From the IMG/VR virus record IMGVR_UViG_3300040801_001224, positions 62,001 through 126,000 of that record: 64,000 bases of DNA; one strand, written 5' to 3'. A program made the position numbers and the translations under genes. Positions 16,046 through 63,096 of this stretch are shown one piece after another. The notes beneath the pieces are model-generated. The model was not told the origin of the DNA and did not search any database. It worked only from the letters and a program-made list of their open reading frames with translations. The stretch's first letter is position 1; each line of letters opens with the position of its first letter.

Positions 16046-16834
16046 ATGTCAAAGAAACTAGAGCAGGTATTAGAATGCCTGATTAACGAAGAATCTGATC
16101 GTGCTAGTGAGTTACTTCATGACGTTATCGTTGAGAAGGCTCGTGGTCTATACCAAGAACTAGTGAACGAAGAAGATGATATGGAGTTAGAAGAAGAAGT
16201 CGTAGAGGAAGAAGAAGCAGTTGAAGAAGGTGAAGACTGTGATTCAGACGACGAAGAAGAGCTAAAAGAGTTTGCTGGAGACGAAGAAGACTTCGGTGGC
16301 GATATGGCTGACGACTTCGATAGCGAAATTGAAGCAGACATGACTGACGACGAAGGCGAATTCGACGCTGAAGAAAGCGACGAAGAAGAAGTTGAAGATC
16401 GTGTTGAGGACTTAGAAGCGGCATTAGCTGACTTACGTGCTGAGTTCGACGCTTTAATGGACGAAGAATTAGAAGAACCACACCACGACGCAGAAGACTT
16501 TGAAGTTGATGCTGACGACATGGACATGGAAGATGACATGGACGAAAGCATGATGGAAGCTACTAAGTTACAGGACAAAGTTGCTGAACCAAGCAATGTT
16601 GAAGGTGCTGATAACAAAGAAGCTCCATACACTAAAGCTCCAAGCAAGCGTTTAGACGGTGCGGATCCAGTTGATTTTGCTGGCGACGCAGAAGAGCAAG
16701 GTATGAAAGCTGAAAAAGGTTCAGACCACACTCCATCAGATAACATTGATGAAGAGCCAAGTGCTACACCAGCGGCTAAGCAAAGCGACAAAGCAGACGA
16801 AAAACACTCTTTATTCACTAAGGAGCCTAAGTAA
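16046..16834 (+). CDS. Highly acidic prohead core / internal head protein
   Basis: Very D/E-rich; directly upstream of the prohead protease (gp67/68 position). Confidence 0.6.
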   Translation: MSKKLEQVLECLINEESDRASELLHDVIVEKARGLYQELVNEEDDMELEEEVVEEEEAVEEGEDCDSDDEEELKEFAGDEEDFGGDMADDFDSEIEADMTDDEGEFDAEESDEEEVEDRVEDLEAALADLRAEFDALMDEELEEPHHDAEDFEVDADDMDMEDDMDESMMEATKLQDKVAEPSNVEGADNKEAPYTKAPSKRLDGADPVDFAGDAEEQGMKAEKGSDHTPSDNIDEEPSATPAAKQSDKADEKHSLFTKEPK

Positions 16835-19880: not shown

Positions 19881-21548
19881 ATGAACGAACGAGAACAAAT
19901 TATAGAACTTATCAAACAAAAACCAAAACATGTAACACAAATTATTAAAAGAGATGATCGGTTATCGATGTATGTATCGGATAATAAAAGAGTTAGTTCG
20001 GCTATATACGCAGAAGAAGTGTATTCGGCTATATACCCAGAAACAACGAACATATGTCCTAATAATAACTTAAAAAAGTTTAAATCGATTAAAGCCGGTT
20101 ATGCTTTTTGTGGCAGGGCAAACTCGTGCGAATGCGCTCGAAAGTCTGTGTCAGATAGTGTGTCGGCGAGTAAATCGAAATTTACAGATAACGATATATT
20201 AAATATTAACCGCAAACGAGAAGCAACCAATATAAAAAAATACGGAGTAAGCAATGTTGGACAGACAGCAAAAGCCAAAGCCAATCACCAAGCATATTAC
20301 GCAGACGACAATAATGTGTCTAAAACTGTTAAACAAATCGAACAAACAAAATTAGATAATTGGGGCAATAAGCATTATAATAATAGTCAGCAAATATCCT
20401 CTACCTGGCGGCAAAAGTCAGATAACGAAAAACAAAGAATAACCAAACAACGATTAAAAACGTATGCTGATAAGTATGGAGATAAGTCACTTCACCTTCT
20501 TCAGTCTTGGTATGATAAATTATGTGATTTTTTCGAAACTCACTACGATGTCAGTATGCTAACAAGCAAAGAAGAATACGTGGGTGTAAGTAACCAACAA
20601 TATTACGAGTTTAAGTGTAATAAATGCGAAGCAGAATTTACTACATACATAGATAATGGCCATCCGCCAATTTGTAAAAAATGTAATCCATCTCCTAAGT
20701 CTCAACCAGAACAAGATATACATGATTGGCTTGTAATGCATGGCATAGATCACGAGATGAACAACAAAACTATTTTAGATGGCAAAGAACTTGACATATA
20801 CATACCGGAAAAAAATATAGCAATTGAATATTGCGGTCTATATTGGCATTCGGATTTTCATAGTAGGATTGACAAATGGTATCACTACGACAAATGGAAA
20901 CAATGCCGAGACAAGAACATCCATCTTATAACTATATTCTCAGACCAATGGGTTCATAAGCGTGATATTGTACTTAAACGTCTTGAAACTAAATTAAAGA
21001 TAAATGTTAAATCTATCGGGGCTCGGAAAACACGTATACGCGAACTAACGAACACAGAAGAAAAAGAATTCTTCTTATTTAATCACATACAAGGCTACAA
21101 TCCAAGTAGAGTGGCTTATGGTTTAATAGAAAATGGCGAAATTGTAGCGGCCATGAGTTTTAAAAAGGTAAGATACCATAGCAAAGATTTATCAAAGGAC
21201 GACTGGGAATTACTAAGGTTTGCTTCATGTAAAAATGTGCAAGGCGGTGCAAGTAAACTTTTTAGGCATTTTATTAAAACAGTCGCCCCTTCGAAAATAG
21301 TTAGTTATAGTGATAATGACTGGAATACAGGGGGATTATATGAACAACTAGGGTTTACGTTGTCGAGGATTAGTGGACCATCATACTGGTACGCCAATGT
21401 CAACGATGATATTAGGTATCATCGGTTTAATTTTAGGAAGAAGGACACCGACCCTGACATGCCAGAAAATCAACGTGTATTTGAATCGCATAAATATCTA
21501 AGGTTTTGGGATACAGGCAATACTCGTTGGATATGGCAAGCCAGTTAA
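19881..21548 (+). CDS. Hef-like homing endonuclease (PD-(D/E)xK/Vsr-like nuclease plus GNAT/Mom-like C-terminal domain)
   Basis: CNKC...CKKC Zn ribbon; ELDIYIPEKNIAIEYCGLYWHS; NHIQG, WELLRFAS, GGASKLF, SYSD...GGLYEQLGF; own GATAAATA at 19848-19855. Confidence 0.75.
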   Translation: MNEREQIIELIKQKPKHVTQIIKRDDRLSMYVSDNKRVSSAIYAEEVYSAIYPETTNICPNNNLKKFKSIKAGYAFCGRANSCECARKSVSDSVSASKSKFTDNDILNINRKREATNIKKYGVSNVGQTAKAKANHQAYYADDNNVSKTVKQIEQTKLDNWGNKHYNNSQQISSTWRQKSDNEKQRITKQRLKTYADKYGDKSLHLLQSWYDKLCDFFETHYDVSMLTSKEEYVGVSNQQYYEFKCNKCEAEFTTYIDNGHPPICKKCNPSPKSQPEQDIHDWLVMHGIDHEMNNKTILDGKELDIYIPEKNIAIEYCGLYWHSDFHSRIDKWYHYDKWKQCRDKNIHLITIFSDQWVHKRDIVLKRLETKLKINVKSIGARKTRIRELTNTEEKEFFLFNHIQGYNPSRVAYGLIENGEIVAAMSFKKVRYHSKDLSKDDWELLRFASCKNVQGGASKLFRHFIKTVAPSKIVSYSDNDWNTGGLYEQLGFTLSRISGPSYWYANVNDDIRYHRFNFRKKDTDPDMPENQRVFESHKYLRFWDTGNTRWIWQAS

Positions 21549-21873: not shown

Positions 21874-23826
21874 ATGTCAAAAATAATAAAATTACAAGGC
21901 GCAACACCAACATATGAGATTAAATCATCTACTCCGGGTGGTGTTGTGGGATTCCAAGTTGGTGGCGACGCAGTCATTGACGGAAATCTAACAGTTCAAG
22001 GAACAACTACAACTATTGAATCAGAAACACTTTCTGTTGCTGACAATAGCATTCTTCTTAATAGCAACTTTTTAAGTGGCGCACCAACAGAAGATTCAGG
22101 TATTGAGGTTTCACGTGGTGATGAACCGAATGTTTTCTTACAGTGGAACGAGACTACTGATGCCTGGCAACTAACTGATAACACGGGTACATTCTATGAT
22201 ATTATACATCAGGGAGTCACTGGATCAGGCTCAGGATTAGATGCTGATACACTTGATGGTGTAGATAGTACTGAATTTGCGATTAAAGACATTAATGAAA
22301 TAGTTTCTGGACGATGGACGTTTGATGCGTCACAAGGCTCAACACCATTGAATAGTACTTACATAGAACTAAATGGTATTGATAACTCAAATATTAACTT
22401 TGAAAATGCCGGGACATTGCGTATGCAGGCCAGCGCATCGGCAACTAATTTTGCGTTAAGAAGACATGATGTTACGGGAACATTTATAGAGTCAAATCTT
22501 GTTGTAAATCTTGACTCAGGTGTAATGACATTGGCGTCTGATGATACAATTATATTGGACACGCCAAGATTATTAGGAATAGCAGACCAAGATTTAACTA
22601 TTATAGCAGGGTCTAACACTGTATTAAATGGCGACGGCTATGATCTAGTACTGAGACCAGGCGTAGCAAACGGAACAGGTAATGAAGGTAAAGTAGTTGT
22701 AGGTGGCTCAACACCTGAATTAACATCACTATCTAGCCTTGCGCTAACGGCTACAGGTGATTTAAGTATACAGGGTTTAGTGTACCCAAGCGCAGATGGA
22801 ACATCGGGCCAAGCAATACTTACTGATGGTGCTGGCAACTTAACGTTTGGTTCTATTGATCTAGATGGTGTGTTAGCATCAGATCTACAAGGCCCTAACG
22901 AAATTATTAGAATGAATGCCGCTGGAACGGCATGGGAATATGTTGTAGATTTCCAGGAACTATCTCAAGATACAACACCACAACTAGGTGGCAACTTAGA
23001 TGTTAACGGCAATAGTATTGTGGGTGATATTGTTCTTGACCCAACGACTAACATTGTTGTTGATGGTGGAATTAAAGCTACTGACGATACAGCACTCACA
23101 ATTGGTGCGGGTAATTCGACAGGGACAGGTGCCGATTTAATCCTAGAGCCGGGTACAGGCACAACGGCTGACGGAAACGTAGTCATTGGCACACCATCTT
23201 CAGATACAGTAATTGAGGCGCCTTCAGGCAACTTAATATTTGATATACAGGACGGCTCAAGTGTTATTATTGGTGATAGCTCATCAGCTAGTCCACAACT
23301 AAGTCCAGACACAGGCGTTGATCTAACTGTTTCAGGTGGAGATAGCATAGCGCCTGATACTGCCGATGGCGGTGATTTAATACTTCGTGGTGGCATTTCA
23401 GACTTAGGCACACCAGGTAGAGTTGTTATTGACAGCGACGTAGTGTTTAATGGAAACGCACCCACTGGCACACCATACCCAATTAACTTTTTTATACATG
23501 ACTTGTTCACAACTGGCGCCAACGCAAATGCGGTTATGTCAGGACACGGTGTTACTGATGATGCGACATTGTCAGCAACAGGCCATGTAGGCCAAGCGTT
23601 TATTGCTTCGGCCACAACATTTAGCTATATTATTAGACGTTTACGTGGGGCGACCTCAACTGACATAGGTACTATTGAATTCTCGGCTGGTAACGGAATA
23701 GCTACAAACTTTACTATCACGGATAGTACATTATTAGCAGGTGATGTGTTGTTGATTGTCAATCCACCAACCCCGGATTCTAACATAGATCACATCACTA
23801 TCACGCTTAAATCTACTACATCGTGA
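21874..23826 (+). CDS. Virion structural / fibre-like protein
   Basis: GNLTVQGTTTTIESETLSVADN, GSGSGLDADTLDG and DTTPQLGGNLDVNG motifs typical of T4-like fibres; GATAAATA at 21838. Confidence 0.7.
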   Translation: MSKIIKLQGATPTYEIKSSTPGGVVGFQVGGDAVIDGNLTVQGTTTTIESETLSVADNSILLNSNFLSGAPTEDSGIEVSRGDEPNVFLQWNETTDAWQLTDNTGTFYDIIHQGVTGSGSGLDADTLDGVDSTEFAIKDINEIVSGRWTFDASQGSTPLNSTYIELNGIDNSNINFENAGTLRMQASASATNFALRRHDVTGTFIESNLVVNLDSGVMTLASDDTIILDTPRLLGIADQDLTIIAGSNTVLNGDGYDLVLRPGVANGTGNEGKVVVGGSTPELTSLSSLALTATGDLSIQGLVYPSADGTSGQAILTDGAGNLTFGSIDLDGVLASDLQGPNEIIRMNAAGTAWEYVVDFQELSQDTTPQLGGNLDVNGNSIVGDIVLDPTTNIVVDGGIKATDDTALTIGAGNSTGTGADLILEPGTGTTADGNVVIGTPSSDTVIEAPSGNLIFDIQDGSSVIIGDSSSASPQLSPDTGVDLTVSGGDSIAPDTADGGDLILRGGISDLGTPGRVVIDSDVVFNGNAPTGTPYPINFFIHDLFTTGANANAVMSGHGVTDDATLSATGHVGQAFIASATTFSYIIRRLRGATSTDIGTIEFSAGNGIATNFTITDSTLLAGDVLLIVNPPTPDSNIDHITITLKSTTS

Positions 23827-25759: not shown

Positions 25760-25770
25760 TGAGGTAAGAC

Positions 25771-28700
25771 ATGCCATTGCTCTTACCCTTACGCCTTAAC
25801 ATTGATGGAGAAGCGCCGGATATTGTATTTGGCGGACATTCTAACGACTATCAAATATTTGCAGGCGAAGAAATAGTATTTGGCGGTGAAGCTGAAACGG
25901 GCTTCTCTCAAGGCTACATTCCAAATCCAAACGGCACAGACGAAGACATAGTCTTCGGAGTGTGTATAGAACCATCAGTTGCTTTTGAGAACATAGCAAC
26001 AGCGACTGGTATATCTGTTACGGCAAATATAGGCACTCCAAAGACTAAAAGATTAGTCGTAATCGCTCTTAGCGATGAAGGGGCATATCCTGAAGAGTTC
26101 CAAGGCGATGTATTTGTGGACGGCAAACTTGCTACGCGAATCGCGGTAGCACAAAACACTGCCGGTTTACAAAACCACCAAGAAATGTTTGCTATTCACG
26201 AGGATCAACTTGGCACATCATCAGGGACAGTTAATGTAACATATACGGGTGGCAATGCAGGCTGGGGCATAAGAGCAATGCTATACACTGGTATTAAGAG
26301 TGTTATTCCTTTTGATGTTGGGATTGATAATACAAACATAGGACCGGATTTAGTAACAACAACACTTGATACTCCACCCGGCGGTTTATTAGTTTACGGT
26401 GTTAGTAATGGTTGGGAATTTGAAACTATTGAGTATCCTGCGCCAATAAATAAGAGAAATATTGGCCTTAACGATCCACCAGATTCAGTAAAATTTACGA
26501 TAGGTGACGTAATTGGAACACCTGACGAAACAGACGCAGTGTATACGGCCGATCCAGGACCTCAATTACGCAGTACAGGCATTGCCGCGTCTTGGGAAAG
26601 AGCTAATTGTGATGCTACGGGCTCACCCTCGTTTACAGTCAATATTAATACTCCACCATCAGCCGCAGATCTTTTTGTACGCTTTACTAGAACAGATAAC
26701 TCAACAACAGGAACGGCTGACCGTGTACCTAACAACGGTGGCGTTCACATATTAAAGCTAGACCCATCTGACAATTACGGTCGATATACAGCCTCAGCGC
26801 AAGGTCTTATCACAGCAACCGAATCAGACATGGTTCTTGACACAACTATTGAGCAAGATCCTGGTATTACACGAGTAGGAAATTCAGTAACATTAGCCAA
26901 CACAGGACGTTACTTAGTTCATTATGAAATGGACTTACAGCATTCTTCAGCAAATGATAGAACAGATGCCACAGCGTTTATTGAAGCAAACGGTACAAGA
27001 ATAGATGGCACTAGATCTTATGCGTATATGCGTGGCCTTGATGGCACTAATGACGGCGCATTAACATGGACAGGCATAATTGATATAAATGCTGGAGATT
27101 CAATTACAGTACGACATCAAAAAACTGATGGGCAAGATTCAACAATTAACCCATCTACCACATTCTTGCAGATTTGGGAAATACCTGCCAACGGTGACGA
27201 AGTAATAATGGAAGCCACTACCGGCGATTTCAATGCTAATGGCATATTTACATACGACACGTTACCGCATATAGACACTGACTCATTTACAGCTACCGCC
27301 GGTGGCAATAGCATTACAGTTGATCAGCAAGATCACGTACTATCGTTCGCTACAATGGGTAGATCTACTCAAACAGCACCACGAGCATATCCAGAAGTAC
27401 GTTTTGTTCTTGATGGAACAACACTTGACTACATGTCGGCCGGTGTATACGAACGTGATTCTGGCGGCCAAGCTCTTGCTAATAATGTTGCCGGTATTAT
27501 TCCTTCAGTTGACGCTAATGGTGTTATACAGGTAGAAACTACACAAGCATCAGGACAAGGTGGTACAGTAACTAATACTGAAGGACAGTTTGCGTTACTA
27601 TCGTTAGAGTCTGTATTTGGACCTTATACATATCCACCAACAGCAACATCAAATAGTAGTATTGGTGACTTTTTAATACTTAGTAATAATGGGTTGTCAG
27701 ACGCACTAGGTACTGCCGGAACACTAGATCCGAATTGGGATACAGTGGTAGCACAACAAGGTTCGGTAGGATCATACAACAACGGAAAATTTTCTCTAAG
27801 ACCAGGCAAATATTTAATAATGTATTCAGAGAAGTTTGCGACTCTAAATACGACAAACAATGAACGTTTTGAAATACAAGGTGAGATAGTTCAAGACGGT
27901 GTTGGTGTCATAGGTGGACGTGGATCAGACTATATACGCAAATCTTCTGGACAACAATCATGTATAGTGTCTGGTGCGATGATTGTGGATATTCCTGGTG
28001 AAGATCTACCTGACGACATAATATTTAATGGCGAAGCGGAAACTTCTAATGCTGAAATATTTGATTACGACCCAGTGACAGACAGCATAATATTTAACGG
28101 CGATTCCGGTAACGATACAGAGATTTCTATAGGCTATGATCCAGTAACTGATCCAAATGATAATTTAATTTTCAACGGCTCGGCAGAAACAGGGTTCGAC
28201 CAGATCTATGTACCAAATCCAAATGGCACTGACATAGATATTGTATTTAATGGCACAGCAGTCGTTACATTTGTTGATACATTTGAATATGAACCACATC
28301 CAGGTGATGTAAACATTGTGTTTGGTGGCGATGCTGATGACACAGGCGTGTCATTCGACTTTAATCCTAATCCAAATGGTACTGATGTTGACATTGTGTT
28401 TGATGGAAACGCAGGTGATGATGTAGAAGTAACGTTTATTTACAATACAAATCCAGATGGAACAGATGAAGACTTAATATTTAACGGCAGTGCTGGTGAT
28501 GATGTGGAAGTAACATTCACATATAACCCAAATCCAGATGGAACAGATGAAGACTTAATATTTAACGGCAATGCTGGTGATGATGTTAGCGTATCATTTG
28601 GATATTTGCCTAATCCGAGTGATAATGTTGTAGATATAGTATTTGATGGCAACGCAGGTGATGACGTTGGTATTACTGTTAATATTAATCCAGAAACAGA

Positions 28701-31700
28701 TGCTGGCGGCGATTTAATATTTAATGGCAATGCTGGTGATGATGTAGAAGTAACCTTTACCTATAATCCAAACGAAGATGGAACAGATGAAGATGTTGTG
28801 TTTAACGGCAACTCAGGTGATGATGTTGGTCGTGACTTTGCTTACATTCCAAACCCACAAGGCTTTGACACTGACATTGTATTTGATGGCGGTAGTTCAG
28901 AAACAGGATTCACACAAAATTATAACCCAGAATTCATACTTGGTAGAGATGATGACATTGAATTTGGTGGTGAAGCAGTAGTAGTTGTCGCAGAAGCATT
29001 TGAATGGATACCAAACCCAGTAGACAATAATATTATATTTGATGGTAACTCTGGTGATGATGTTGGCATTGAGTTAGGATTTGATTCTAATCCAGATGGG
29101 ACAATTGTTGATCTAGTATTTAATGGAACAGCGATAACAGAATTTACAGTTAATGTTGATGTTAACCCAGACGGTACAGATGAAGACCTAATATTCAACG
29201 GTAACTCAGGTGATGATGTTGGAGTAACATTCACTGTACTGCCTAATGATGGCGATACAAACGTTACTGACATCGTATTCAATAGCGACACTGACGATAC
29301 AGGTATAACATTTAACTATATTCCAAATCCATTTGATGCAGATATTGATATATTATTTGCAGGTGCTGGCATCCAAGTAGTTACACGAGTCTATGATACG
29401 AATCCAAATGGCACAGACGAAAACATCGTTTTTGATGGCAACTCCGGTGACGACGTTAATATTGAATTAGGGTACATTCCAAATCCAGATTCTACAGATG
29501 AAGACATTGTATTCAATAGTAATACTGACGATACAGGAATTACGTTTAACTATATTCCAAACCCAACTGACAATGATGTTAATATCGTGTTTGCAGGTAA
29601 TGCGAGTCTCGATACAGAAGTAAGTTTGGGATATACACCAAACCCAACTGGAAGCGATCTTGATATAGTATTCAACGGAGAGGCGATAGTCTCGAATTCA
29701 GAAGTTAATGAATGGATACCACATCCGGGTGACATAAACATCGTGTTTAATGATCACGCCATAACAGGATTTGACCAGAACTATATTCCAAATCCAAATG
29801 GCACAGATGAAGATTTAATATTCAATGGTAATGCAGGTGATGATGTTGAAGTAACATTCACATATAATCCAAACGAAGATGGCACAGATGTTGACATCAT
29901 ATTTGATGGAAATGCCGGCGATGACACTGGAATTACAATAAATATTGACCCAGAAACAGGTGCTGGCGGTGACCTAATATTTAACGGTAATGCATCTGAT
30001 GACGTAGAGATAAGCTTAGGATACTTGCCAAACAATGGCAATACTAACGTTGTTGATCTATTATTTAACGATCACGCCGTAACAGGATTTGACCAGAACT
30101 ATATTCCAAATCCAGACGGCACAGATGAAGATCTAATATTTAACGGCAATACTGACGATACAAACGTTATAATTAATATTGATCCTGAAAACGACAACAA
30201 CGGTGACTTAGTATTTAACGGCAACGCAGGTGATGATGTAGGCGTAGAGCTCGGATACATCCCTAATCCAGATGGTACAGATGTAGATGTTGTCTTTAAC
30301 AGTAATACTGACGATACAGGAATTACGTTTAACTATATTCCGAATGCTGATGGTACCGATGAAGACCTAGTATTCAACGGTGAAGCAATTGTCACATTTG
30401 TTAATGTGTACATTTACGAATCACATCCAGGCGTTAACAGTATTCTGTTTAACGGCAATGCTGGAGATGATGTTGGTATTGAATTAGGGTATAACCCTAA
30501 TCCAAATGGTACAGATGAAGACCTAATCTTTAACGGACATGCTGATACACCATTTGTTGTTAACGTTGATCCGGATACTGACGCTAACGGTGATTTGATA
30601 TTTAATGGCAACGCTAGTGATGACGTCGAAGTAACATACAATGTATTGCCTAATGATGGTGACACAAATATCACTGACCTTGTCTTTAATAGTAACACTG
30701 ACGATACAGGAATTACGTTTAATTATGTTCCAAATGCAGATGGCACAACTACTGACATCTTATTTGATGGCAGTACATCGGACATTAGTTTCGATTTCGG
30801 ATGGACACCAGACCCATTTGATGAAAACATAATATTCGACGGTGACCCTACGTTTGGGTTTACACAAAATTATATTCCAAACCCATCGCTTGGACAGACT
30901 GACATTAGGTTCCTTGGCACTGCTATTGTGGAAGTTGACATCGCTGAGAATAACATATTCGAGTACATCCCTAATCCTACTGGAAATGATGTTGATATAA
31001 TATTTAACGGTGAAGCGCAAGTATACACTAACTACTTGCCTAACCCTGACTTAGATATTATTGACATTGAATTTGATGGTGATGCAGAAGTCACAGTATG
31101 CTGGACGGTGGAACCAGAAAACGACAACAACGGTGATTTAGTATTTAACGGTAACGCTGATACTGATTTCGATGACACATTTGAATATATTCCAAATCCA
31201 GATGGCACTACTGTTGACATAGTATTTGATGGTGATGGAACTGCCTCATTCTGCATTAATGTCGATCCTAACCCAGATGGAACAGATGTAGATATAATAT
31301 TTAACGGCCATGCGGATGTGGTTGCTGATATCACATATGTTCCGAATCCAGACGGTACGGATGAAGACATAATATTTAACGGTCATGCTGACACTTCATT
31401 TGGCGATGAGAAAGGCGGACGTGGTGTTAACAAGACAGGTGCAACTAAGTCACCAGCACGTAGAGCAAGAACTCAAAGAATACTTGTACAGCACGAACCA
31501 TCATTAATGAGAGCAGACGCAAAGGTTGGTTTTGCTGGACACGCCGATGCCCAGTTCTACTCAGCGACATGGTCACCATTAGCTCACCCAGATATGGTGG
31601 AGAGCAAATTCTCACTGATCAATACATTAGACGCTCCAAAGAAATCTCTACAGCTTACGGAATCAACTGAAGAGAAGAAGAAACCAAAAGTTGAACTACT

Positions 31701-31887
31701 GCCGGCAGTATATGATTATGAAGGCAACGCAAAAATTGAAATAGATTTAGATGGTGAGTCAGACGTAGAACACTATGACCACCATAAATATTTGGAAAAT
31801 GAAGATGAAAAGATTATTGAATCACTGTTGAATGAACAAACAAGGATGTTTAGCTATATAATATTCAATAAACCAGAAGTCAAATAA
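25771..31887 (+). CDS. Giant acidic repeat protein (probable virion fibre/appendage) with C1q/BclA-like inserted domains
   Basis: 2038 aa; ~44 repeats of YxPNPDGTDEDLIFNGxAGDD; GRYLVHYE...ANGTRIDG...IDINAGDSITV jelly-roll-like segments. Confidence 0.7.
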   Translation: MPLLLPLRLNIDGEAPDIVFGGHSNDYQIFAGEEIVFGGEAETGFSQGYIPNPNGTDEDIVFGVCIEPSVAFENIATATGISVTANIGTPKTKRLVVIALSDEGAYPEEFQGDVFVDGKLATRIAVAQNTAGLQNHQEMFAIHEDQLGTSSGTVNVTYTGGNAGWGIRAMLYTGIKSVIPFDVGIDNTNIGPDLVTTTLDTPPGGLLVYGVSNGWEFETIEYPAPINKRNIGLNDPPDSVKFTIGDVIGTPDETDAVYTADPGPQLRSTGIAASWERANCDATGSPSFTVNINTPPSAADLFVRFTRTDNSTTGTADRVPNNGGVHILKLDPSDNYGRYTASAQGLITATESDMVLDTTIEQDPGITRVGNSVTLANTGRYLVHYEMDLQHSSANDRTDATAFIEANGTRIDGTRSYAYMRGLDGTNDGALTWTGIIDINAGDSITVRHQKTDGQDSTINPSTTFLQIWEIPANGDEVIMEATTGDFNANGIFTYDTLPHIDTDSFTATAGGNSITVDQQDHVLSFATMGRSTQTAPRAYPEVRFVLDGTTLDYMSAGVYERDSGGQALANNVAGIIPSVDANGVIQVETTQASGQGGTVTNTEGQFALLSLESVFGPYTYPPTATSNSSIGDFLILSNNGLSDALGTAGTLDPNWDTVVAQQGSVGSYNNGKFSLRPGKYLIMYSEKFATLNTTNNERFEIQGEIVQDGVGVIGGRGSDYIRKSSGQQSCIVSGAMIVDIPGEDLPDDIIFNGEAETSNAEIFDYDPVTDSIIFNGDSGNDTEISIGYDPVTDPNDNLIFNGSAETGFDQIYVPNPNGTDIDIVFNGTAVVTFVDTFEYEPHPGDVNIVFGGDADDTGVSFDFNPNPNGTDVDIVFDGNAGDDVEVTFIYNTNPDGTDEDLIFNGSAGDDVEVTFTYNPNPDGTDEDLIFNGNAGDDVSVSFGYLPNPSDNVVDIVFDGNAGDDVGITVNINPETDAGGDLIFNGNAGDDVEVTFTYNPNEDGTDEDVVFNGNSGDDVGRDFAYIPNPQGFDTDIVFDGGSSETGFTQNYNPEFILGRDDDIEFGGEAVVVVAEAFEWIPNPVDNNIIFDGNSGDDVGIELGFDSNPDGTIVDLVFNGTAITEFTVNVDVNPDGTDEDLIFNGNSGDDVGVTFTVLPNDGDTNVTDIVFNSDTDDTGITFNYIPNPFDADIDILFAGAGIQVVTRVYDTNPNGTDENIVFDGNSGDDVNIELGYIPNPDSTDEDIVFNSNTDDTGITFNYIPNPTDNDVNIVFAGNASLDTEVSLGYTPNPTGSDLDIVFNGEAIVSNSEVNEWIPHPGDINIVFNDHAITGFDQNYIPNPNGTDEDLIFNGNAGDDVEVTFTYNPNEDGTDVDIIFDGNAGDDTGITINIDPETGAGGDLIFNGNASDDVEISLGYLPNNGNTNVVDLLFNDHAVTGFDQNYIPNPDGTDEDLIFNGNTDDTNVIINIDPENDNNGDLVFNGNAGDDVGVELGYIPNPDGTDVDVVFNSNTDDTGITFNYIPNADGTDEDLVFNGEAIVTFVNVYIYESHPGVNSILFNGNAGDDVGIELGYNPNPNGTDEDLIFNGHADTPFVVNVDPDTDANGDLIFNGNASDDVEVTYNVLPNDGDTNITDLVFNSNTDDTGITFNYVPNADGTTTDILFDGSTSDISFDFGWTPDPFDENIIFDGDPTFGFTQNYIPNPSLGQTDIRFLGTAIVEVDIAENNIFEYIPNPTGNDVDIIFNGEAQVYTNYLPNPDLDIIDIEFDGDAEVTVCWTVEPENDNNGDLVFNGNADTDFDDTFEYIPNPDGTTVDIVFDGDGTASFCINVDPNPDGTDVDIIFNGHADVVADITYVPNPDGTDEDIIFNGHADTSFGDEKGGRGVNKTGATKSPARRARTQRILVQHEPSLMRADAKVGFAGHADAQFYSATWSPLAHPDMVESKFSLINTLDAPKKSLQLTESTEEKKKPKVELLPAVYDYEGNAKIEIDLDGESDVEHYDHHKYLENEDEKIIESLLNEQTRMFSYIIFNKPEVK
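28012..31401 (+). repeat. Coding tandem repeat array, ~26-aa (75-84 nt) unit, ~44 copies
   Basis: Counted 44 (I/L/V)(I/V/L)F(N/D/G/A) cores by eye; near-identical DNA copies, e.g. 28451 and 28532 (81-nt period). Confidence 0.9.
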
Positions 31888-31933: not shown

Positions 31934-32170
31934 ATGGCAACCCAACAAGGAACGGTATTATTTAAAAACAAAAGTATTGAAATGCTTGAATGTAAAATTC
32001 AGGCTGTCAACACTGCGACTGCCGTCCTATCTTGGGATGGAGTTGGGTCAAACAACGATGGCGATGGGTTTTATAGCGCAACCTGTGTATTAGTTGACAG
32101 CACAACGATCCAGGTTTTTCGTAGAGCAGATTCCGAGCAAGTGTTAGTACATTGGGAGATAACTGACTAA
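31934..32170 (+). CDS. Small fibre-accessory protein (paralog of 43222-43506)
   Basis: KSIE..VNTA..ATCVLVDSTTI..VHWEITD aligns by eye with KSVQ..VNTA..CTAELTSSTNV..IFVVEFN. Confidence 0.55.
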   Translation: MATQQGTVLFKNKSIEMLECKIQAVNTATAVLSWDGVGSNNDGDGFYSATCVLVDSTTIQVFRRADSEQVLVHWEITD

Positions 32171-33000
32171 TGAGCAATTTTTATGTAAAAGTGAACTCTA
32201 ACAGAATTGTTGTCGCAGTGATGGACCTGGGTGCTGAGTACACGAAAAATAATTATTACCCGATTGATGAGTACAACACAGACTTGTTAGGAACTCAACT
32301 TGCACCAGGAATCTTACCTGGAACTCCAGTGACTATAGGTGATTTTGAAGAAAACCCCGATATTGCTGATGTCGATAATGATGGCATTTCTGTACTTAGT
32401 TCAGGCACAAGCTCATGCTGTTTATGGTTTCCTGAAACAATAGTTAAAACATACAACGTCAATCTTAAGGGCAACAGGATGACGGTCTATAATACTGACA
32501 GTAGCTCATTTTGGTCTTATTTTGCTTATGGCGGAACATATGAATATTGGGACGCTACTACGAGGTATTTCACAAATAATACCTCAAATCAAACTATCGT
32601 TGATATTGAAGGTCAAGGAGTTTTGACAAACGTTATTTGTCCAGTGCCCAATTCATGGAACAGTACCGTTACGGTGATTGTAACTGTTGATGGGGTAGAG
32701 AACGTATTTGTGTCTAGATCTAACGATACAGTAAGTAGATACTGTTTGGGATTCTTAGCACCAGAGTATGACAGTAGTGACGATGATGACGATCACATAC
32801 AATATCCGTCAGCAAACTGGAGAGAAGAAGACAGGGAAATGTTTGTGTTAATACCACCGACTGCTTTGTCACGAGGGCGTTCAGGAATTAAATTCAATTC
32901 AAGCTTAAAAGTTGACGTAAAAAGTAGCAGTGGTTGGCAATATGGTAATGATAGCATCGGCGGTGTATCATACCTAACATACATTCCGTTTGGATTATAG
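32170..33000 (+). CDS. Fibre-associated protein, paralog family A
   Basis: FPETIV..NLKGN, QTIVDIEGQGVLTNVICP, C-terminal SYLTYIPFG shared with 33010 and 43506. Confidence 0.65.
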   Translation: MSNFYVKVNSNRIVVAVMDLGAEYTKNNYYPIDEYNTDLLGTQLAPGILPGTPVTIGDFEENPDIADVDNDGISVLSSGTSSCCLWFPETIVKTYNVNLKGNRMTVYNTDSSSFWSYFAYGGTYEYWDATTRYFTNNTSNQTIVDIEGQGVLTNVICPVPNSWNSTVTVIVTVDGVENVFVSRSNDTVSRYCLGFLAPEYDSSDDDDDHIQYPSANWREEDREMFVLIPPTALSRGRSGIKFNSSLKVDVKSSSGWQYGNDSIGGVSYLTYIPFGL

Positions 33001-33009
33001 GATTAAAAT

Positions 33010-33849
33010 ATGACATTTTATGTACAACTAGACGCAGATGATACAGTTAATGCGGTTTTGGACTTAGACGGCACTGTCAGTGATCCTAGTCTTTATCCAA
33101 TTGCTTCTTTTAATTTGAGTTACTTAGGATTAAAATACACTGGCAGTGGAGATAACACTCAACAAGTAAATTTAGATGATTTTGAAAGTGCGCCCGGCAC
33201 CCCGTTTGATCCCACTGATCCAGACAATCCAAATTCACCAGTTTCCACTGGAAAATGCTTGAAATTTCCTGAAACAATCGTTAATAACGAAAATTTGAAT
33301 CTTAAAGGCAATAAGATGGCTAGTTATAATACTGACGATAATAGCTTCTGGTCTTATTTTGGTGCAGGCGGGACTTACGAATACTGGGATTCCACAGTGT
33401 ATTATGCGTATGATAACTACGAAGATCAGACGATTGTGGAACTCGAAGGCTCTGGTATTTTAACTAATGTGATCTGCCCATCGCCGAAGTCAAACAATAG
33501 CACGGTGACAGTAACGATAACGCTTGATGGGGTGGAGTATATGTTTACGTCACGAGAAAATGATGCTAATCGTAGATATTGTCTGGGATACTTAGCGCCA
33601 GATTACGATGGTAACGAAAACAACGATGATGATGATACGAGGATAGAATACCCGGCTTCGAATTGGAAAGAAGTTGATAGGGAAATGTTTGTATTGATTC
33701 CGCCAACAGCATTACAGCGTGGCCAATCAGGATTAAAATTTAAAGAGAGTATGAAAGTTCAGATAAGGAGCAGTTCAGGCTGGTCGAGATCGGGACGTGA
33801 TGAATTTTCCGGCGCATCCTATCTAACATACATACCATTTGGAGTATAA
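33010..33849 (+). CDS. Fibre-associated protein, paralog family A (tandem duplicate)
   Basis: Closely similar to 32170-33000 along the whole C-terminal two-thirds. Confidence 0.65.
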   Translation: MTFYVQLDADDTVNAVLDLDGTVSDPSLYPIASFNLSYLGLKYTGSGDNTQQVNLDDFESAPGTPFDPTDPDNPNSPVSTGKCLKFPETIVNNENLNLKGNKMASYNTDDNSFWSYFGAGGTYEYWDSTVYYAYDNYEDQTIVELEGSGILTNVICPSPKSNNSTVTVTITLDGVEYMFTSRENDANRRYCLGYLAPDYDGNENNDDDDTRIEYPASNWKEVDREMFVLIPPTALQRGQSGLKFKESMKVQIRSSSGWSRSGRDEFSGASYLTYIPFGV

Positions 33850-33852
33850 ATT

Positions 33853-34293
33853 ATGACAATAATAGTATTAAACCCAGCAACGAAGGAACCATTGGACCCT
33901 CAACGTACGCCAGTGAATGGTGATCTAGTTGAAGAAATCATGCCTGGCGGTATGAAAAAACGATATACATTTTTAGATTTAGTAGAGCCAGAGCCGATTC
34001 CAATTAGAATTATTTCAGTGAGATCTTTTCTAAATAGATTTACTTTACCAGAAAGAATTGCCTTACGAACAGCGGTGGGTGTAGATCCAATTGTAGAAGA
34101 CTTAATGGAAAGTTTAAAACTTGCGGCATTCATTGATTTGGATGATCCAATTATCCCGCCAGGCTTAGGCTACATTGCTGGTATGTCACAAGCACCAGAT
34201 CCAGTAATCGCCCAACCCATAATTTCGCCAACACGCATACCAGAATTATTAGTGGACGGTGAAGAATACGAAGAATATACAGGCTTCCGTTAA
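33853..34293 (+). CDS. Tail-fibre assembly/chaperone-like protein, paralog family B
   Basis: IRIISVRSFLNRFTLPERIALR...AAFIDLDDP domain shared with 39218, 44323 and 44821. Confidence 0.6.
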   Translation: MTIIVLNPATKEPLDPQRTPVNGDLVEEIMPGGMKKRYTFLDLVEPEPIPIRIISVRSFLNRFTLPERIALRTAVGVDPIVEDLMESLKLAAFIDLDDPIIPPGLGYIAGMSQAPDPVIAQPIISPTRIPELLVDGEEYEEYTGFR

Positions 34294-35381: not shown

Positions 35382-36761
35382 TTATTTTGAACTGTATAGA
35401 CGCCAATAACCCGGATTAAATTCACCTAAATAAGTGAATATCCATTCACCGTTCACATATTTATAGTGTTGCATGTTGAATGAATTAACTGTATAAGCGA
35501 TGTCATTCTGGGTAGCGGCTTCAAATACAACTTGCCATTGGGCACCGTTATATTGGATGATATCATTAGGATAAGCTCGCAACGCACCCCAAGCGCCTGA
35601 TGTGACATCAATAGCAGGTTCTTCACCGTTACTTGTATCTGATGTTATTAAATAACGCTGACCAGTAATCGCCCCTGGAAGTTCATTACCTGGTGAGCGT
35701 TTAACTGGATTGACAATTCTGTTGATAGGACTAATGCCAGCAGTAGTGCCAGGCACAGTGTCTTGGTCAATGGCAACTTTAACAACATCTGGTTCATTAG
35801 TTAGATCAATTTGACCAATAATGTCTCCATCTTCAGATTCAATATCATTATCAGTTTTAATATATAAATCGGTAAACTCGATGTCTAGGCCATATGTTTC
35901 AGTTAATAGTGAATTCCAATCAGGAGTTTCATCAGGATCATTACTTATAAGTTTAGCAACAACATCCTGCCCTTCATATCCAACTTCTAACTTATAATCG
36001 CCTGGCGTAACAATTAATCGATCTAATTCGTTGAAACAGCCCAGTGGATCTTCTAATGTTAAATCAATCTCACGATCACTTAAATCATTAATTTCAACTA
36101 TGTTGGTTACAACTTGTTCAATCCATTGCTTACTCTTTAACTTGGCCGGTGGATTTAGCCATATAGGTGCTTCGAATGTTAGTGATGTAATTTCACGATC
36201 AGTAACAGAGCCTTGCGGAATACTTCTAGAAGACCACTGTGTGTTTGTTAGTTGTAACTCAAATATATTTGTCCAATCATAAGCGTTATCATTTTGTTGT
36301 AACGTTAGTGCATCATTGAACCAGACTAAAATTTGTTCCAATAATTGTAGCTTAGTCGTTGTTGACGTAGTCCAAATGTCTAATTGGAATGTTAACTTAT
36401 ATGGCACTGGCATGTAACGCTGTAGGGTATACATGTTGCCTGCTTCAGTTCCGTAACCAGTGTCTTTATCGTAGTTTCTTTCAACAATATTTTTTGTATC
36501 GTTAAACATTGGGTCACGTCTGCGACCAGGATCCATTTCAATATCTCTAATCCATGCGCTCATCATAGGCGATGGCATAACAACGTTTTCACTATTTTCA
36601 CGTAAAATACTTGCTACCATACGGTTTGGATCACCGTACATAATTGGCACACGTTCAGTAACAAGAGCACCGCCACGAGTTTCCTGGTAGCTTAGGTCAG
36701 CAAATACACGAATGAACTGTAGTAAGTAACGTCTAATCTGTTGGTCGTAGAAAAAATCCAT
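35382..36761 (-). CDS. gp15: Tail sheath stabiliser / tail terminator
   Basis: FFYDQQIRRYLLQF, VPIMYG, MPVPYKLTFQLDIWT, LLEQILVWF; likely start MDFFYD at 36761. Confidence 0.8.
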   Translation of the reverse strand: MDFFYDQQIRRYLLQFIRVFADLSYQETRGGALVTERVPIMYGDPNRMVASILRENSENVVMPSPMMSAWIRDIEMDPGRRRDPMFNDTKNIVERNYDKDTGYGTEAGNMYTLQRYMPVPYKLTFQLDIWTTSTTTKLQLLEQILVWFNDALTLQQNDNAYDWTNIFELQLTNTQWSSRSIPQGSVTDREITSLTFEAPIWLNPPAKLKSKQWIEQVVTNIVEINDLSDREIDLTLEDPLGCFNELDRLIVTPGDYKLEVGYEGQDVVAKLISNDPDETPDWNSLLTETYGLDIEFTDLYIKTDNDIESEDGDIIGQIDLTNEPDVVKVAIDQDTVPGTTAGISPINRIVNPVKRSPGNELPGAITGQRYLITSDTSNGEEPAIDVTSGAWGALRAYPNDIIQYNGAQWQVVFEAATQNDIAYTVNSFNMQHYKYVNGEWIFTYLGEFNPGYWRLYSSK

Positions 36762-36814
36762 GATATCCTTTTTCGATAAATATAACAATACTATTTATCA
36801 CAAAGAGAGACTAT

Positions 36815-62078: not shown

Positions 62079-62453
62079 GGCGTTCGGATAAGGGCTGGTA
62101 TCCCGGAGAACTCACTGGCTGAAGAAGCTATAGACCTCCTTAAGTGCCATTGCGTAAAGCATAAATCAGTTCGCCGTTTTAATTCGATGAAGTAATTTAA
62201 TGATACTGTGGACGCCAGTTCGAATCTGGCCATCTCCACCAAATCTATGGGGATGAATTAGGTTTCGACAGGGTATACTGAGAATTATGGAGAATCAGTC
62301 AATGCTAAAGGCTGTGAGGATTGGGAGTAACACCTTTAATGGTGCTCGGTCGAAGAAGCAAAAAAATAATTGAAAATGATGAAATTTTCGCATTAGCGGC
62401 ATAGACCGTTAACGGGGTTTTACACCGTCTTCCTTGTTATCAAAAGACGGTGT
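62079..62453 (+). ncRNA. ssrA: Circularly permuted (two-piece) tmRNA; outer boundaries approximate
   Basis: T-arm GCCAG-TTCGAAT-CTGGC plus CATCTCC-A-CCA ends at 62241; 7-nt spacer; GGGGATG starts at 62249 (G3.U pair); tag ORF ENDEIFALAA* at 62372-62404. Confidence 0.9.
62422..62453. terminator. Hairpin at the tmRNA 3' end, overlapping the convergent gene stop
   Basis: ACACCGTCTT (62422-62431) / AAGACGGTGT (62444-62453). Confidence 0.6.
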
Positions 62454-63096
62454 CTTTATGTATGCTATAGTGTTGGCGTAACCCGTTCACTGACTTTTCT
62501 TCTCCGCAAATAATACAAGAACATTTTATTCTGCTACTATTATTTTTAGAAATTTTTTCTCTGGTAGTTTTGGATAATTTTCTTCCCTTCCCTTGCCCAG
62601 TGCGATCTATGTTTCTTATCTTCGGGTCATGCATTGGGTTGTTGTTTTTTAATCGTTCCGAAGCTTGCCGGCGTTGTTCGTTAGTCCATTCGTACCCTCC
62701 ACCACCTGGTCTAGATACTCCTTTATTTGACTCAGATATTTTTCTTTTGTGTTCTTCAGAAAAAGATCGTCCAGTATTGGCCTGACTTATTGTTTTTTTG
62801 TGTTCGTCAGATATTACCCTCGGTCCACCATCTGTTCCGTTTTCTATAGCAAGATTTGCCCATTCTTTTGATTCTACGATTTGGTTTAGCTTTGAAAAAA
62901 GTGTAGAAAATCTTTTTAGCTTTTCTAAGCTTTTGAATTCCTTATACCACAAGGTATCGATAAATTTGCCGTGTTTCTTGATGTGACGTAACCAGTATTT
63001 GCCCGATCCGGCATATTTAGTCGGCTCATTTTTTGTCTTGCCGAAATATTTGAGCCCGGTTTTCTGGTGCTGTTTTATATATAGATAAATACTCAT
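62440..63096 (-). CDS. GIY-YIG (Seg-like) homing endonuclease with NUMOD3-like repeats
   Basis: IYLYIKQHQKTGLKYFGKT, YAGSG, WANL..ENG..GG, SDEHKKTIS / SEEHKRKIS; likely start MSIYLY at 63096 after AGGAG. Confidence 0.8.
   Translation of the reverse strand: MSIYLYIKQHQKTGLKYFGKTKNEPTKYAGSGKYWLRHIKKHGKFIDTLWYKEFKSLEKLKRFSTLFSKLNQIVESKEWANLAIENGTDGGPRVISDEHKKTISQANTGRSFSEEHKRKISESNKGVSRPGGGGYEWTNEQRRQASERLKNNNPMHDPKIRNIDRTGQGKGRKLSKTTREKISKNNSSRIKCSCIICGEEKSVNGLRQHYSIHKDTVF

What the first reader, a model, noticed from the sequence alone, without database searches (positions are those of the whole stretch)
25771..31887. 2038-aa protein with ~44 copies of an acidic ~26-aa repeat that I do not recognise, interrupted by C1q/BclA-like domains
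Seen: unit consensus F/Y-x-Y-x-PNPDGTDEDLIFNG-N-AGDD-V. Two to three copies are at the very N-terminus, then a ~680-aa non-repeat insert, then the long array and a basic linker (RRARTQR). The array is nearly devoid of K/R and rich in D/N/G/P, with sub-variants recurring in mixed order (e.g. NSNTDDTGITFNY four times, NDHAxTGFDQNY twice), implying repeated recombinational shuffling. The insert has GxYLVxY...NG..I.G...AGD segments like C1q/BclA jelly rolls. Inference: a long Ca2+-binding beta-solenoid or beaded fibre displaying lectin-like heads; length is probably variable between isolates.
Basis: partly seen in the sequence, partly recalled or inferred. Interest (0 to 1): 0.6.

Follow-up and report, generated by a model that had tools for sequence, protein, structure and literature searches.

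The report
Giant acidic-repeat fibre protein, jumbo phage
A 2038-residue protein of an uncultured jumbo phage from a microbial mat carries 44 copies of a very acidic ~26-residue repeat that matches no described family; it is most likely a long surface fibre of the virus particle, but that is inferred from context, not shown.

Summary
ORF 25771-31887 (+) encodes 2038 aa with 44 units of 23-31 aa, plus 3 degenerate N-terminal units. A unit HMM gives 44 hits against 0.03 in shuffles. The array has 21% D+E, four R and no K.

The window lies in a 328-kb jumbo myophage related to Pseudomonas phage PA5oct. The gene sits between the head genes and a NUDIX / T4-gp15-like tail block.

The repeat matches nothing above threshold in Pfam, NCBIfam, PHROGs or PDB. 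A repeat profile run against 1.84 billion proteins found two real relatives besides a fragment of this gene. One is a 1745-aa orthologue with the same 44 colinear units. The other is a ~335-aa short form with about six units, in the same genomic slot; a profile word search added a second, 316-aa short form.

The units show a 9/18-unit higher-order period. The insert's first conserved domain gives sub-threshold BclA_C hits in both long proteins; C1q gives none.

Both structure predictions failed and the trimer test gave no verdict. Fold, Ca2+ binding, oligomeric state and virion location all remain inferred.

The equal unit count in a diverged orthologue argues against free length variation.

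The parts
25771..31887 (+). Whole gene, 2038 aa (P0001), including the stop codon. The Shine-Dalgarno GAGG is at 25761-25764.
   Evidence: dN/dS against the orthologue P0002 is 0.12-0.14 in the insert and the array.
25771..25965 (+). N-terminal cap, aa 1-65: three degenerate repeat units. Their ends read DIVFGG, EIVFGG and DIVFGV.
   Evidence: The unit HMM hits aa 40-63.
25966..26655 (+). Domain X, aa 66-295. It is beta-rich, specific to this protein and absent from the orthologue P0002. No family match.
26656..27198 (+). Domain a, aa 296-476: candidate BclA_C-like (TNF/C1q-type) jelly roll. It is 76% identical to the same domain of P0002.
   Evidence: BclA_C E 1.4e-3 (P0001) and 5.8e-6 (P0002), both below the cut-off. 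It is the only BclA_C ring in the 328-kb genome, E 3e-4. phrog_28263 tail-fibre C-terminus E 1.3e-4 for P0002. Identity.
27199..27654 (+). Domain b, aa 477-628. It is conserved (78% identical to P0002) and beta-rich, and may be the same fold as domain a.
   Evidence: hhalign a against b, E 0.14, in the equivalent register
27655..27972 (+). Domain c, aa 629-734. It is conserved (81% identical to P0002) and may be the same fold as domain a.
   Evidence: hhalign a against c, E 0.0046
27973..31383 (+). Main array, aa 735-1871: 44 acidic units of 23-31 aa. Landmark 'EAIV..EW/Y.PHPGD.NIVF' units fall at positions 5, 14, 23, 32 and (41), giving a 9/18-unit super-repeat.
31384..31485 (+). Basic linker, aa 1872-1905, containing RRARTQR.
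31486..31884 (+). Conserved C-terminal module, aa 1906-2038: an HEPS motif, one more degenerate unit (KVGFAG), Y-D-H..L..ED..II, and a terminal helix. It is shared with the ~320-aa short forms and is the family's common core.
   Evidence: AlphaFold predicts a helix at aa 2004-2021, but at low confidence.
31934..34293 (+). Downstream cassette that accompanies only the long form: ORFs of 78 aa, 276 aa, 279 aa (a paralogue of the 276-aa ORF) and 146 aa. None has a family match.
   Evidence: The cassette is absent next to the short forms.

Best explanation
P0001 is most likely a very long surface fibre ('hair' or accessory adhesin) of an uncultured PA5oct-related jumbo myophage from a microbial mat.

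Proposed layout:
- The conserved C-terminal module (basic linker, HEPS motif, terminal helix), which the ~320-aa short forms share, fixes the protein to the particle or drives its assembly.
- The 44 acidic units form a beta-rich rod. Each unit has one 7-residue strand and one 3-4-residue strand, and the most probable form is a beta-solenoid with one unit per coil. With 47 coils at 4.8 Å each, the rod would be about 22 nm long, and the number of units would set its length.
- Near the free N-terminal end, three strongly conserved beta domains form the ligand-binding head. The first is BclA_C-like. This phage adds a fourth, lineage-specific domain.

Shown: the anatomy, the purifying selection, the rarity of the family, the shared slot with the short forms, the equal unit count in the orthologue, and the 9/18-unit period.

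Inferred: virion location, the solenoid fold, the C-terminal anchor, ligand binding, and any role for cations in neutralising the -238 charge.
For: Genomic context:
- The order is portal, protease, MCP (78.6% identical to PA5oct), homing endonuclease, a variable block, then NUDIX(-) and a T4-gp15-like gene(-). This is syntenic with PA5oct, whose variable block holds gp324, a 1008-aa 'tail fiber protein H' detected in virions by mass spectrometry.
- A neighbouring 650-aa ORF shares its N-terminus with gp324.

Family:
- The short forms P0007 and P0008 align with the last units plus the C-terminus (E 3e-27).
- They lie directly beside the same (-)200-aa / NUDIX / gp15-like block. The 200-aa gene is 73% identical to ours.

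Rod:
- AlphaFold places a 7-residue strand and a 3-residue strand in each unit.
- Every top Foldseek row is a right-handed beta-helix protein, although none is significant.
- Length differences between units fall in the two loops.
- The unit count is 44 in both long proteins, although the array is only 52% identical and dS is saturated.

Head:
- BclA_C hits appear in both long proteins.
- A match to the C-terminal part of a tail-fibre PHROG appears for P0002.
- One ESM Atlas neighbour cluster has C1q in 26% of its members.
- Domains a-c are 76-81% identical between the two proteins, with dN/dS about 0.12.

Composition and literature:
- Low K+R and pI near 4.1 are shared with the other fibre-like ORFs of the window.
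- Related 121Q/phAPEC6-type jumbo phages carry hair-like fibres on capsid and tail whose proteins are not identified (PMC7247149).
Against: - There is no proteomic or imaging evidence for this phage.
- No family member occurs in any of 50,697 deposited phage genomes, nor in PA5oct, Phosso or Vibrio phage 2.275.O. No experimentally studied virion therefore bears on it.
- The AlphaFold models are poor, with mean pLDDT 42.5 for the repeats and 30 for the insert.
- All Foldseek matches have E above 0.29 and TM about 0.2.
- BclA_C stays below its cut-off, and sub-threshold rings occur in 7 of 14 control genomes at E up to 1.
- The most conserved part is the putative head, whereas phage receptor-binding tips are usually the most variable part.
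- A C-terminal anchor is the reverse of most tail fibres.
Confidence: 0.5

Rival explanations
1. Monomeric capsid-decoration fibre of the Hoc type. The C-terminal module would bind the capsid lattice, the chain would project outward as a single beta-solenoid, and the three tandem jelly-roll-like domains a, b and c would pack into one intrachain pseudo-trimeric head.
For: - The gene lies just downstream of the head genes.
- By established knowledge, T4 Hoc is anchored by its C-terminal domain.
- There are three tandem domains of possibly one fold.
- phAPEC6 has fibres at the centres of its hexamers (PMC7247149).
- A net charge of -238 per chain would make side-by-side trimers costly.
Against: - The similarity among a, b and c is weak (E 0.14 and 0.0046).
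- No fold model is usable.
- No Ig-like or Hoc-like match was found.
- The gene is equally close to the neck / tail-completion genes.
Confidence: 0.2
2. Not a surface fibre. It would be an acidic protein that acts inside the capsid or the infected cell (for example a packaged or ejected polyanion, or a DNA mimic), or one released to bind mat exopolymers.
For: - The charge density is extreme, and other very acidic ORFs lie in the head module: ORF 16046-16834 has 38.9% D+E.
- There is no direct evidence of virion exposure.
Against: - It combines a beta-strand repeat architecture with a BclA_C-like domain.
- Its neighbours are fibre genes.
- No signal peptide is visible in the N-terminal sequence (by eye only; no predictor was run).
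- The unit number is strictly conserved, which fits a structural ruler better than a polyanion.
Confidence: 0.12
3. A tailspike-like enzyme. The array would be a right-handed parallel beta-helix with polysaccharide-degrading activity.
For: - The top Foldseek rows are polygalacturonase, tailspikes, chondroitinase B and fucoidan lyase.
- The coil length of 23-28 aa fits such helices (established knowledge).
Against: - All of those rows are insignificant (E above 0.29).
- There is no Pfam beta-helix or lyase hit.
- The units are too uniform and carry no catalytic insertion.
- Forty-four coils is about three times the length of known tailspikes.
Confidence: 0.05

Closest known systems
BclA C-terminal domain (Pfam PF18573), C1q/TNF-like jelly roll of the Bacillus exosporium hair protein
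   Same: Domain a (aa 296-476) matches the profile over positions 11-107 of 128 in both long proteins. BclA is likewise the distal knob of a surface hair.
   Different: The scores of 18.9 and 26.6 bits fall below the 38-bit cut-off. There is no collagen-like GXY stalk. The domain is internal and near the N-terminus rather than C-terminal. Trimer formation is untested.
PA5oct gp324 'tail fiber protein H', and the fibre slot between the MCP and the NUDIX/gp15-like genes of PA5oct-type jumbo phages
   Same: It occupies the same genomic slot and orientation, and gp324 is a large protein detected in virions.
   Different: There is no sequence similarity to P0001 (best E 0.024). The profile A2 finds nothing in PA5oct.
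Cation-stabilised beta-solenoid rods of giant adhesins, such as RTX beta-rolls and region IV of the Marinomonas ice-binding adhesin (from established knowledge)
   Same: Both have short tandem units rich in D, N and G, almost no K or R, and an alternating-strand pattern.
   Different: The GGxGxD nonapeptide occurs only once, in the insert (aa 715), and not in the array; no DxDxDG motif occurs. The unit is 26 aa rather than 9 or 19. Several orthologue units lack the acidic loop. Cation binding is untested.
Hair-like fibres of phAPEC6, 121Q and CBB jumbo phages (PMC7247149)
   Same: These phages belong to the same broad MCP lineage (about 67% MCP identity) and carry long flexible appendages whose proteins are not assigned.
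   Different: tblastn of P0001 and P0007 found no homologue in any of the 50,697 deposited phage records. The link is by analogy only.
T4 Hoc
   Same: Hoc is a head-proximal gene whose product is anchored by its C-terminus with distal N-terminal domains (established knowledge).
   Different: No Ig-like domains were found, and P0001 is about five times larger.

Membership tests
Pfam BclA_C (PF18573) / C1q-TNF superfamily | Profile score at or above the curated cut-off (38 bits) | tested here: not met
   18.9 bits for P0001 and 26.6 bits for P0002 domain a. The six-frame genome scan gives 18.7 bits. C1q PF00386 gives no hit.
Pfam BclA_C (PF18573) / C1q-TNF superfamily | Ten-strand jelly-roll fold | tested here: inconclusive
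   The AlphaFold model of aa 60-760 has mean pLDDT 30. It is beta-rich, but the topology cannot be trusted.
Pfam BclA_C (PF18573) / C1q-TNF superfamily | Homotrimer preceded by a collagen-like GXY stalk | tested here: not met
   No run of five or more GXY triplets occurs. Trimerisation of the domain itself was not tested.
RTX / beta-roll Ca2+-binding repeats | Tandem GGxGxDxUx nonapeptides | tested here: not met
   One chance GGxGxD occurs in the whole protein (aa 715, in the insert), and none in the array.
DxDxDG / thrombospondin type-3 Ca2+ loops | DxDxDG motif in each unit | tested here: not met
   Zero occurrences in P0001 and in P0002.
Right-handed parallel beta-helix (pectate-lyase/tailspike type) | Significant sequence or structure match to a beta-helix family | tested here: inconclusive
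   No Pfam hit was found. The top Foldseek rows are all beta-helices, but with E 0.29 or more and TM about 0.2, from a model with pLDDT 42.5.
CBM56 (PF22184) | Score at or above 27 bits, and recurrence in relatives | tested here: not met
   26.2 bits, a single stretch at aa 856-922. It is absent from P0002.
Trimeric phage fibre (generic) | Homotrimer | tested here: inconclusive
   Three copies of a 9-unit block gave ipSAE 0.00, reported as 'no answer'. This is not evidence either way.
Virion structural protein | Detected in purified particles | not testable with these tools
   The phage is uncultured. No holder of the sequence is on record as an RNA run, and no proteome exists.
New family defined here (P0001, P0002, P0007, P0008) | Terminal IxFxG units, a basic linker and an HEPS...Y-D-H..L..ED..II C-terminus, in the slot beside the (-)200-aa / NUDIX / gp15-like genes | tested here: met

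The most novel reading that the evidence does not exclude
The 44-unit array is a new kind of cation-neutralised beta-solenoid whose coil number is held fixed as a molecular ruler. It would carry an intrachain pseudo-trimeric TNF-like head on a monomeric hair. That would give a first molecular identity to the unassigned 'hairy' appendages of jumbo phages, here adapted to stick to the Ca2+/Mg2+-rich exopolymer matrix of microbial mats.
Probability: 0.12. Interest if true: 0.75.

Novelty: new variant of a known kind. Interest (0 to 1): 0.5.

Why it matters
Large repetitive fibre proteins are expected in jumbo phages, but this repeat belongs to no described family. Collections of about 15 billion proteins hold only four distinct members. 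The family shows a clear evolutionary path: a ~320-aa protein with about six units grew, by duplication of 9-unit blocks and the insertion of globular domains, into a 1750-2040-aa giant whose unit count then stayed fixed. If the fibre reading is right, the protein offers three things: a tractable model of how a phage builds and meters a long rod, a new repeat scaffold, and a candidate for the unassigned hair-like appendages of jumbo phages.

Tried and rejected
- tblastn of P0001, P0007 and P0002 domain a against 50,697 phage genomes found nothing or nothing significant.
- Megablast of the region against the phage collection found no match.
- Word-based searches gave only the orthologue for the repeat array and nothing for domain a.
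- PDB sequence searches with the whole protein, the repeat profile and domains a, b and c gave no meaningful hit.
- NCBIfam gave nothing.
- The ESM Atlas gave no usable hit for the repeats.
- AlphaFold2 on aa 1538-2038, with an alignment of shifted super-repeats, reached mean pLDDT 42.5. On aa 60-760 it reached pLDDT 30. Neither model is fit for fold assignment.
- Complex prediction with three copies of a 9-unit block returned no verdict, ipSAE 0.00. I do not count this for or against a trimer.
- The upstream 317-aa ORF is not a short-form paralogue.
- The profile A2 found no second copy in the phage's own genome, and none in PA5oct, Phosso or Vibrio phage 2.275.O.
- Promoter and terminator scans were no better than shuffles.
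- Contigs of four runs of one microbial-mat study, laid on 5930 bases (within the operators' limit), were identical to the window. At 2-5x depth they showed no joints or indels, so they cannot test length variation.
- P0004-P0006 from the profile search are spurious. They are cysteine-rich, Fn3-type and eukaryotic repeat proteins.
Full report
**1. What is there**

The ORF at 25771-31887 (+) is open for 2038 codons. It starts 12 nt after the stop of the upstream ORF and has a GAGG ribosome-binding site at 25761-25764.

The protein (P0001) has seven parts:
- aa 1-65: three degenerate repeat units.
- aa 66-734: a non-repeat insert.
- aa 735-1871: the main array of 44 units.
- aa 1872-1905: a basic linker containing RRARTQR.
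- aa 1906-2038: a C-terminal module.

**2. The repeat**

The units are 23-31 aa long, with modes of 25 and 27. The consensus of 86 units from this protein and its orthologue is N-A-G/T-D-D-V/T-G-I/V-T-F-N-Y-I-P-N-P-D-G-T-D-E-D-I-I-F-N/D-G. The F is invariant, the final G is 91% conserved, the I two residues before the F is 79%, and the P is 80%.

A unit HMM gives 44 hits in P0001. Shuffles of the protein average 0.03 hits.

The array has 21.3% D+E, four R, no K and a net charge of -238.

At the DNA level the copies are old. Only five register as a tandem repeat, and the others are 60-88% alike.

**3. Whose gene it is**

The window is bases 62001-126000 of a 328,096-bp virus record with direct terminal repeats. 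Its major capsid protein is 78.6% identical to that of Pseudomonas jumbo phage PA5oct, and about 67-70% identical to those of the Phosso, CBB, GAP32 and 121Q-type phages.

The gene order is portal, protease, scaffold-like gene, MCP, homing endonuclease, a variable block, then on the other strand a 200-aa gene, NUDIX, a T4-gp15-like gene and a virion protein. This matches PA5oct.

In PA5oct the variable block holds gp324, a 1008-aa 'tail fiber protein H' found in virions by mass spectrometry. P0001 is not similar to gp324. A neighbouring 650-aa ORF does share gp324's N-terminus.

The sequence occurs in runs from one microbial-mat metagenome study.

**4. Is the repeat a known family? No**

Pfam gives only two sub-threshold hits:
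- CBM_56 at 26.2 bits against a cut-off of 27. It is a single stretch and is absent from the orthologue.
- BclA_C, which lies in the insert, not in the repeat.

PHROGs, NCBIfam and PDB sequences give nothing.

I ran a two-unit profile (A1, 84 rows) against 1.84 billion representative proteins. It returned six proteins:
- The orthologue P0002.
- P0003, a 361-aa fragment identical to the C-terminus of this gene.
- P0007, a 335-aa relative.
- Three spurious repeat proteins.

A profile word search added P0008, 316 aa. The family is therefore extremely rare.

**5. What the relatives teach**

P0002 (1745 aa, locus L003, from another metagenome) lacks aa 66-295 but keeps everything else.

Identity to P0001 varies by region:
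- Insert domains a, b and c: 76-81%.
- Array: 52%.
- C-terminus: 47%.

dN/dS is about 0.12-0.14 in the insert and the array and about 0.30 in the C-terminus, and dS is saturated or nearly so.

P0002 also has exactly 44 array units. Landmark units are colinear one to one: positions 2, 3, 5, 12-14, 18, 19, 23, 24, 29-32, 34 and 36-42. At other positions the unit type differs, which indicates local conversion.

A distinctive unit, EAIV..EW/Y.PHPGD.NIVF, recurs at positions 5, 14, 23, 32 and (41) in both proteins. Unit-to-unit similarity peaks at lags 9 and 18 in both.

The array is therefore about five copies of an old 9-unit block that predates the split of the two phages, and its unit number has since been kept. 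This also argues against mis-assembly of the repeat.

P0007 and P0008 are short forms. Each has a ~45-aa N-terminus, about six degenerate IxFxG units, the basic linker and the same C-terminal module. Pairwise E is 3e-27 to P0002 and 3e-14 to P0001.

Both short forms lie directly beside the (-)200-aa / NUDIX / gp15-like block. The 200-aa gene is 73% identical to ours. The long forms are thus expanded versions of a small protein in a fixed slot.

A cassette of 78-, 276-, 279- and 146-aa ORFs accompanies only the long forms.

**6. The insert**

Domain a (aa 296-476) hits BclA_C in both long proteins, in the same register, but below the cut-off. It is the only such ring in the whole phage genome.

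P0002's domain a also touches the C-terminal end of a tail-fibre PHROG, E 1.3e-4. One ESM Atlas neighbour cluster carries C1q in 26% of its members. The C1q profile itself gives nothing.

Domains b and c resemble domain a weakly, in the same register.

The AlphaFold model is useless, with mean pLDDT 30. I therefore regard 'one BclA_C-like jelly roll, possibly three' as a lead and not a finding.

**7. The fold of the repeat**

AlphaFold (mean pLDDT 42.5) places a 7-residue strand on V-x-V-x-F-x-Y and a 3-residue strand on L-I-F in every unit. Foldseek's best rows are all right-handed beta-helix proteins, but none is significant.

Length differences between units fall in the two loops. Several P0002 units do without the PNPxGTD loop altogether. 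This fits a solenoid with one unit per coil and weakens the idea that this loop is an essential Ca2+ site.

The RTX motif occurs only once, in the insert and not in the array; no DxDxDG or collagen motif occurs. The trimer test gave no verdict.

**8. Most likely mechanism**

Confidence is about 0.5. I read the protein as a virion surface fibre with three functional parts:
- The conserved C-terminal module anchors or assembles it.
- The 44 coils form a rod of roughly 22 nm whose length is set by the unit number.
- The conserved N-proximal domains bind a ligand.

The extreme negative charge must be screened by cations or must keep the fibres apart. Which of these applies is unknown.

Hair-like fibres of unknown protein identity are documented on the capsid and tail of related jumbo phages (PMC7247149). 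No homologue of P0001 exists in any deposited phage, so that link is analogy only.

The rivals are a monomeric Hoc-like capsid hair with a pseudo-trimeric head, a non-virion acidic protein, and a tailspike-like enzyme.

**9. Verdict**

- The prediction of variable length is not supported.
- The repeat is a new family within a known kind of protein.

Noticed in passing
window 62181-62404 (+): A permuted (two-piece) tmRNA gene lies inside the phage genome. Rfam RF04321 scores 95.6 bits against a gathering score of 47. ARAGORN calls 62149-62495 with the tag peptide ENDEIFALAA. Permuted tmRNAs are typical of alphaproteobacteria and some cyanobacteria (established knowledge), so this may hint at the host.
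   Followed up: partly
window 31934-34293 (+): A four-gene cassette lies after the giant gene: ORFs of 78 aa, 276 aa, 279 aa and 146 aa. The 276- and 279-aa ORFs are 53% identical paralogues with a D-rich patch. The 78- and 276-aa ORFs were checked and are conserved beside the orthologue in L003, which has ORFs of matching size (277 and 113 aa) at the other two places. The cassette is absent beside the short forms. None of the four has a family match. They could be partners or assembly factors of the fibre.
   Followed up: partly
window 19881-21548 (+): A 555-aa homing/HNH endonuclease lies directly after the major capsid gene, as in PA5oct (gp328).
   Followed up: no
window 16046-16834 (+): A 262-aa ORF with 38.9% D+E lies between the portal and the prohead protease. 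It is probably a prohead core or scaffold-type acidic protein.
   Followed up: no
window 21874-23826 (+): A 650-aa acidic ORF (pI 4.05, 3.1% K+R) has an N-terminal ~90 aa resembling PA5oct gp324 'tail fiber protein H' (E 1e-5). It is probably the true counterpart of gp324.
   Followed up: partly
window 35382-36788 (-): The best PHROG match for this ORF is 'tail sheath' (phrog_11196), but it also hits the sheath-stabiliser phrog_227, and its orthologues in related contigs carry Pfam T4-gp15_tss. At 468 aa it looks more like a gp15-type tail completion protein than a sheath.
   Followed up: no
window 25966-26655 (+), aa 66-295 of P0001: This 230-aa beta-rich domain is present in this phage and absent from the orthologue. 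It has no match anywhere and appears to be a recent domain insertion or loss at the distal end of the protein.
   Followed up: partly
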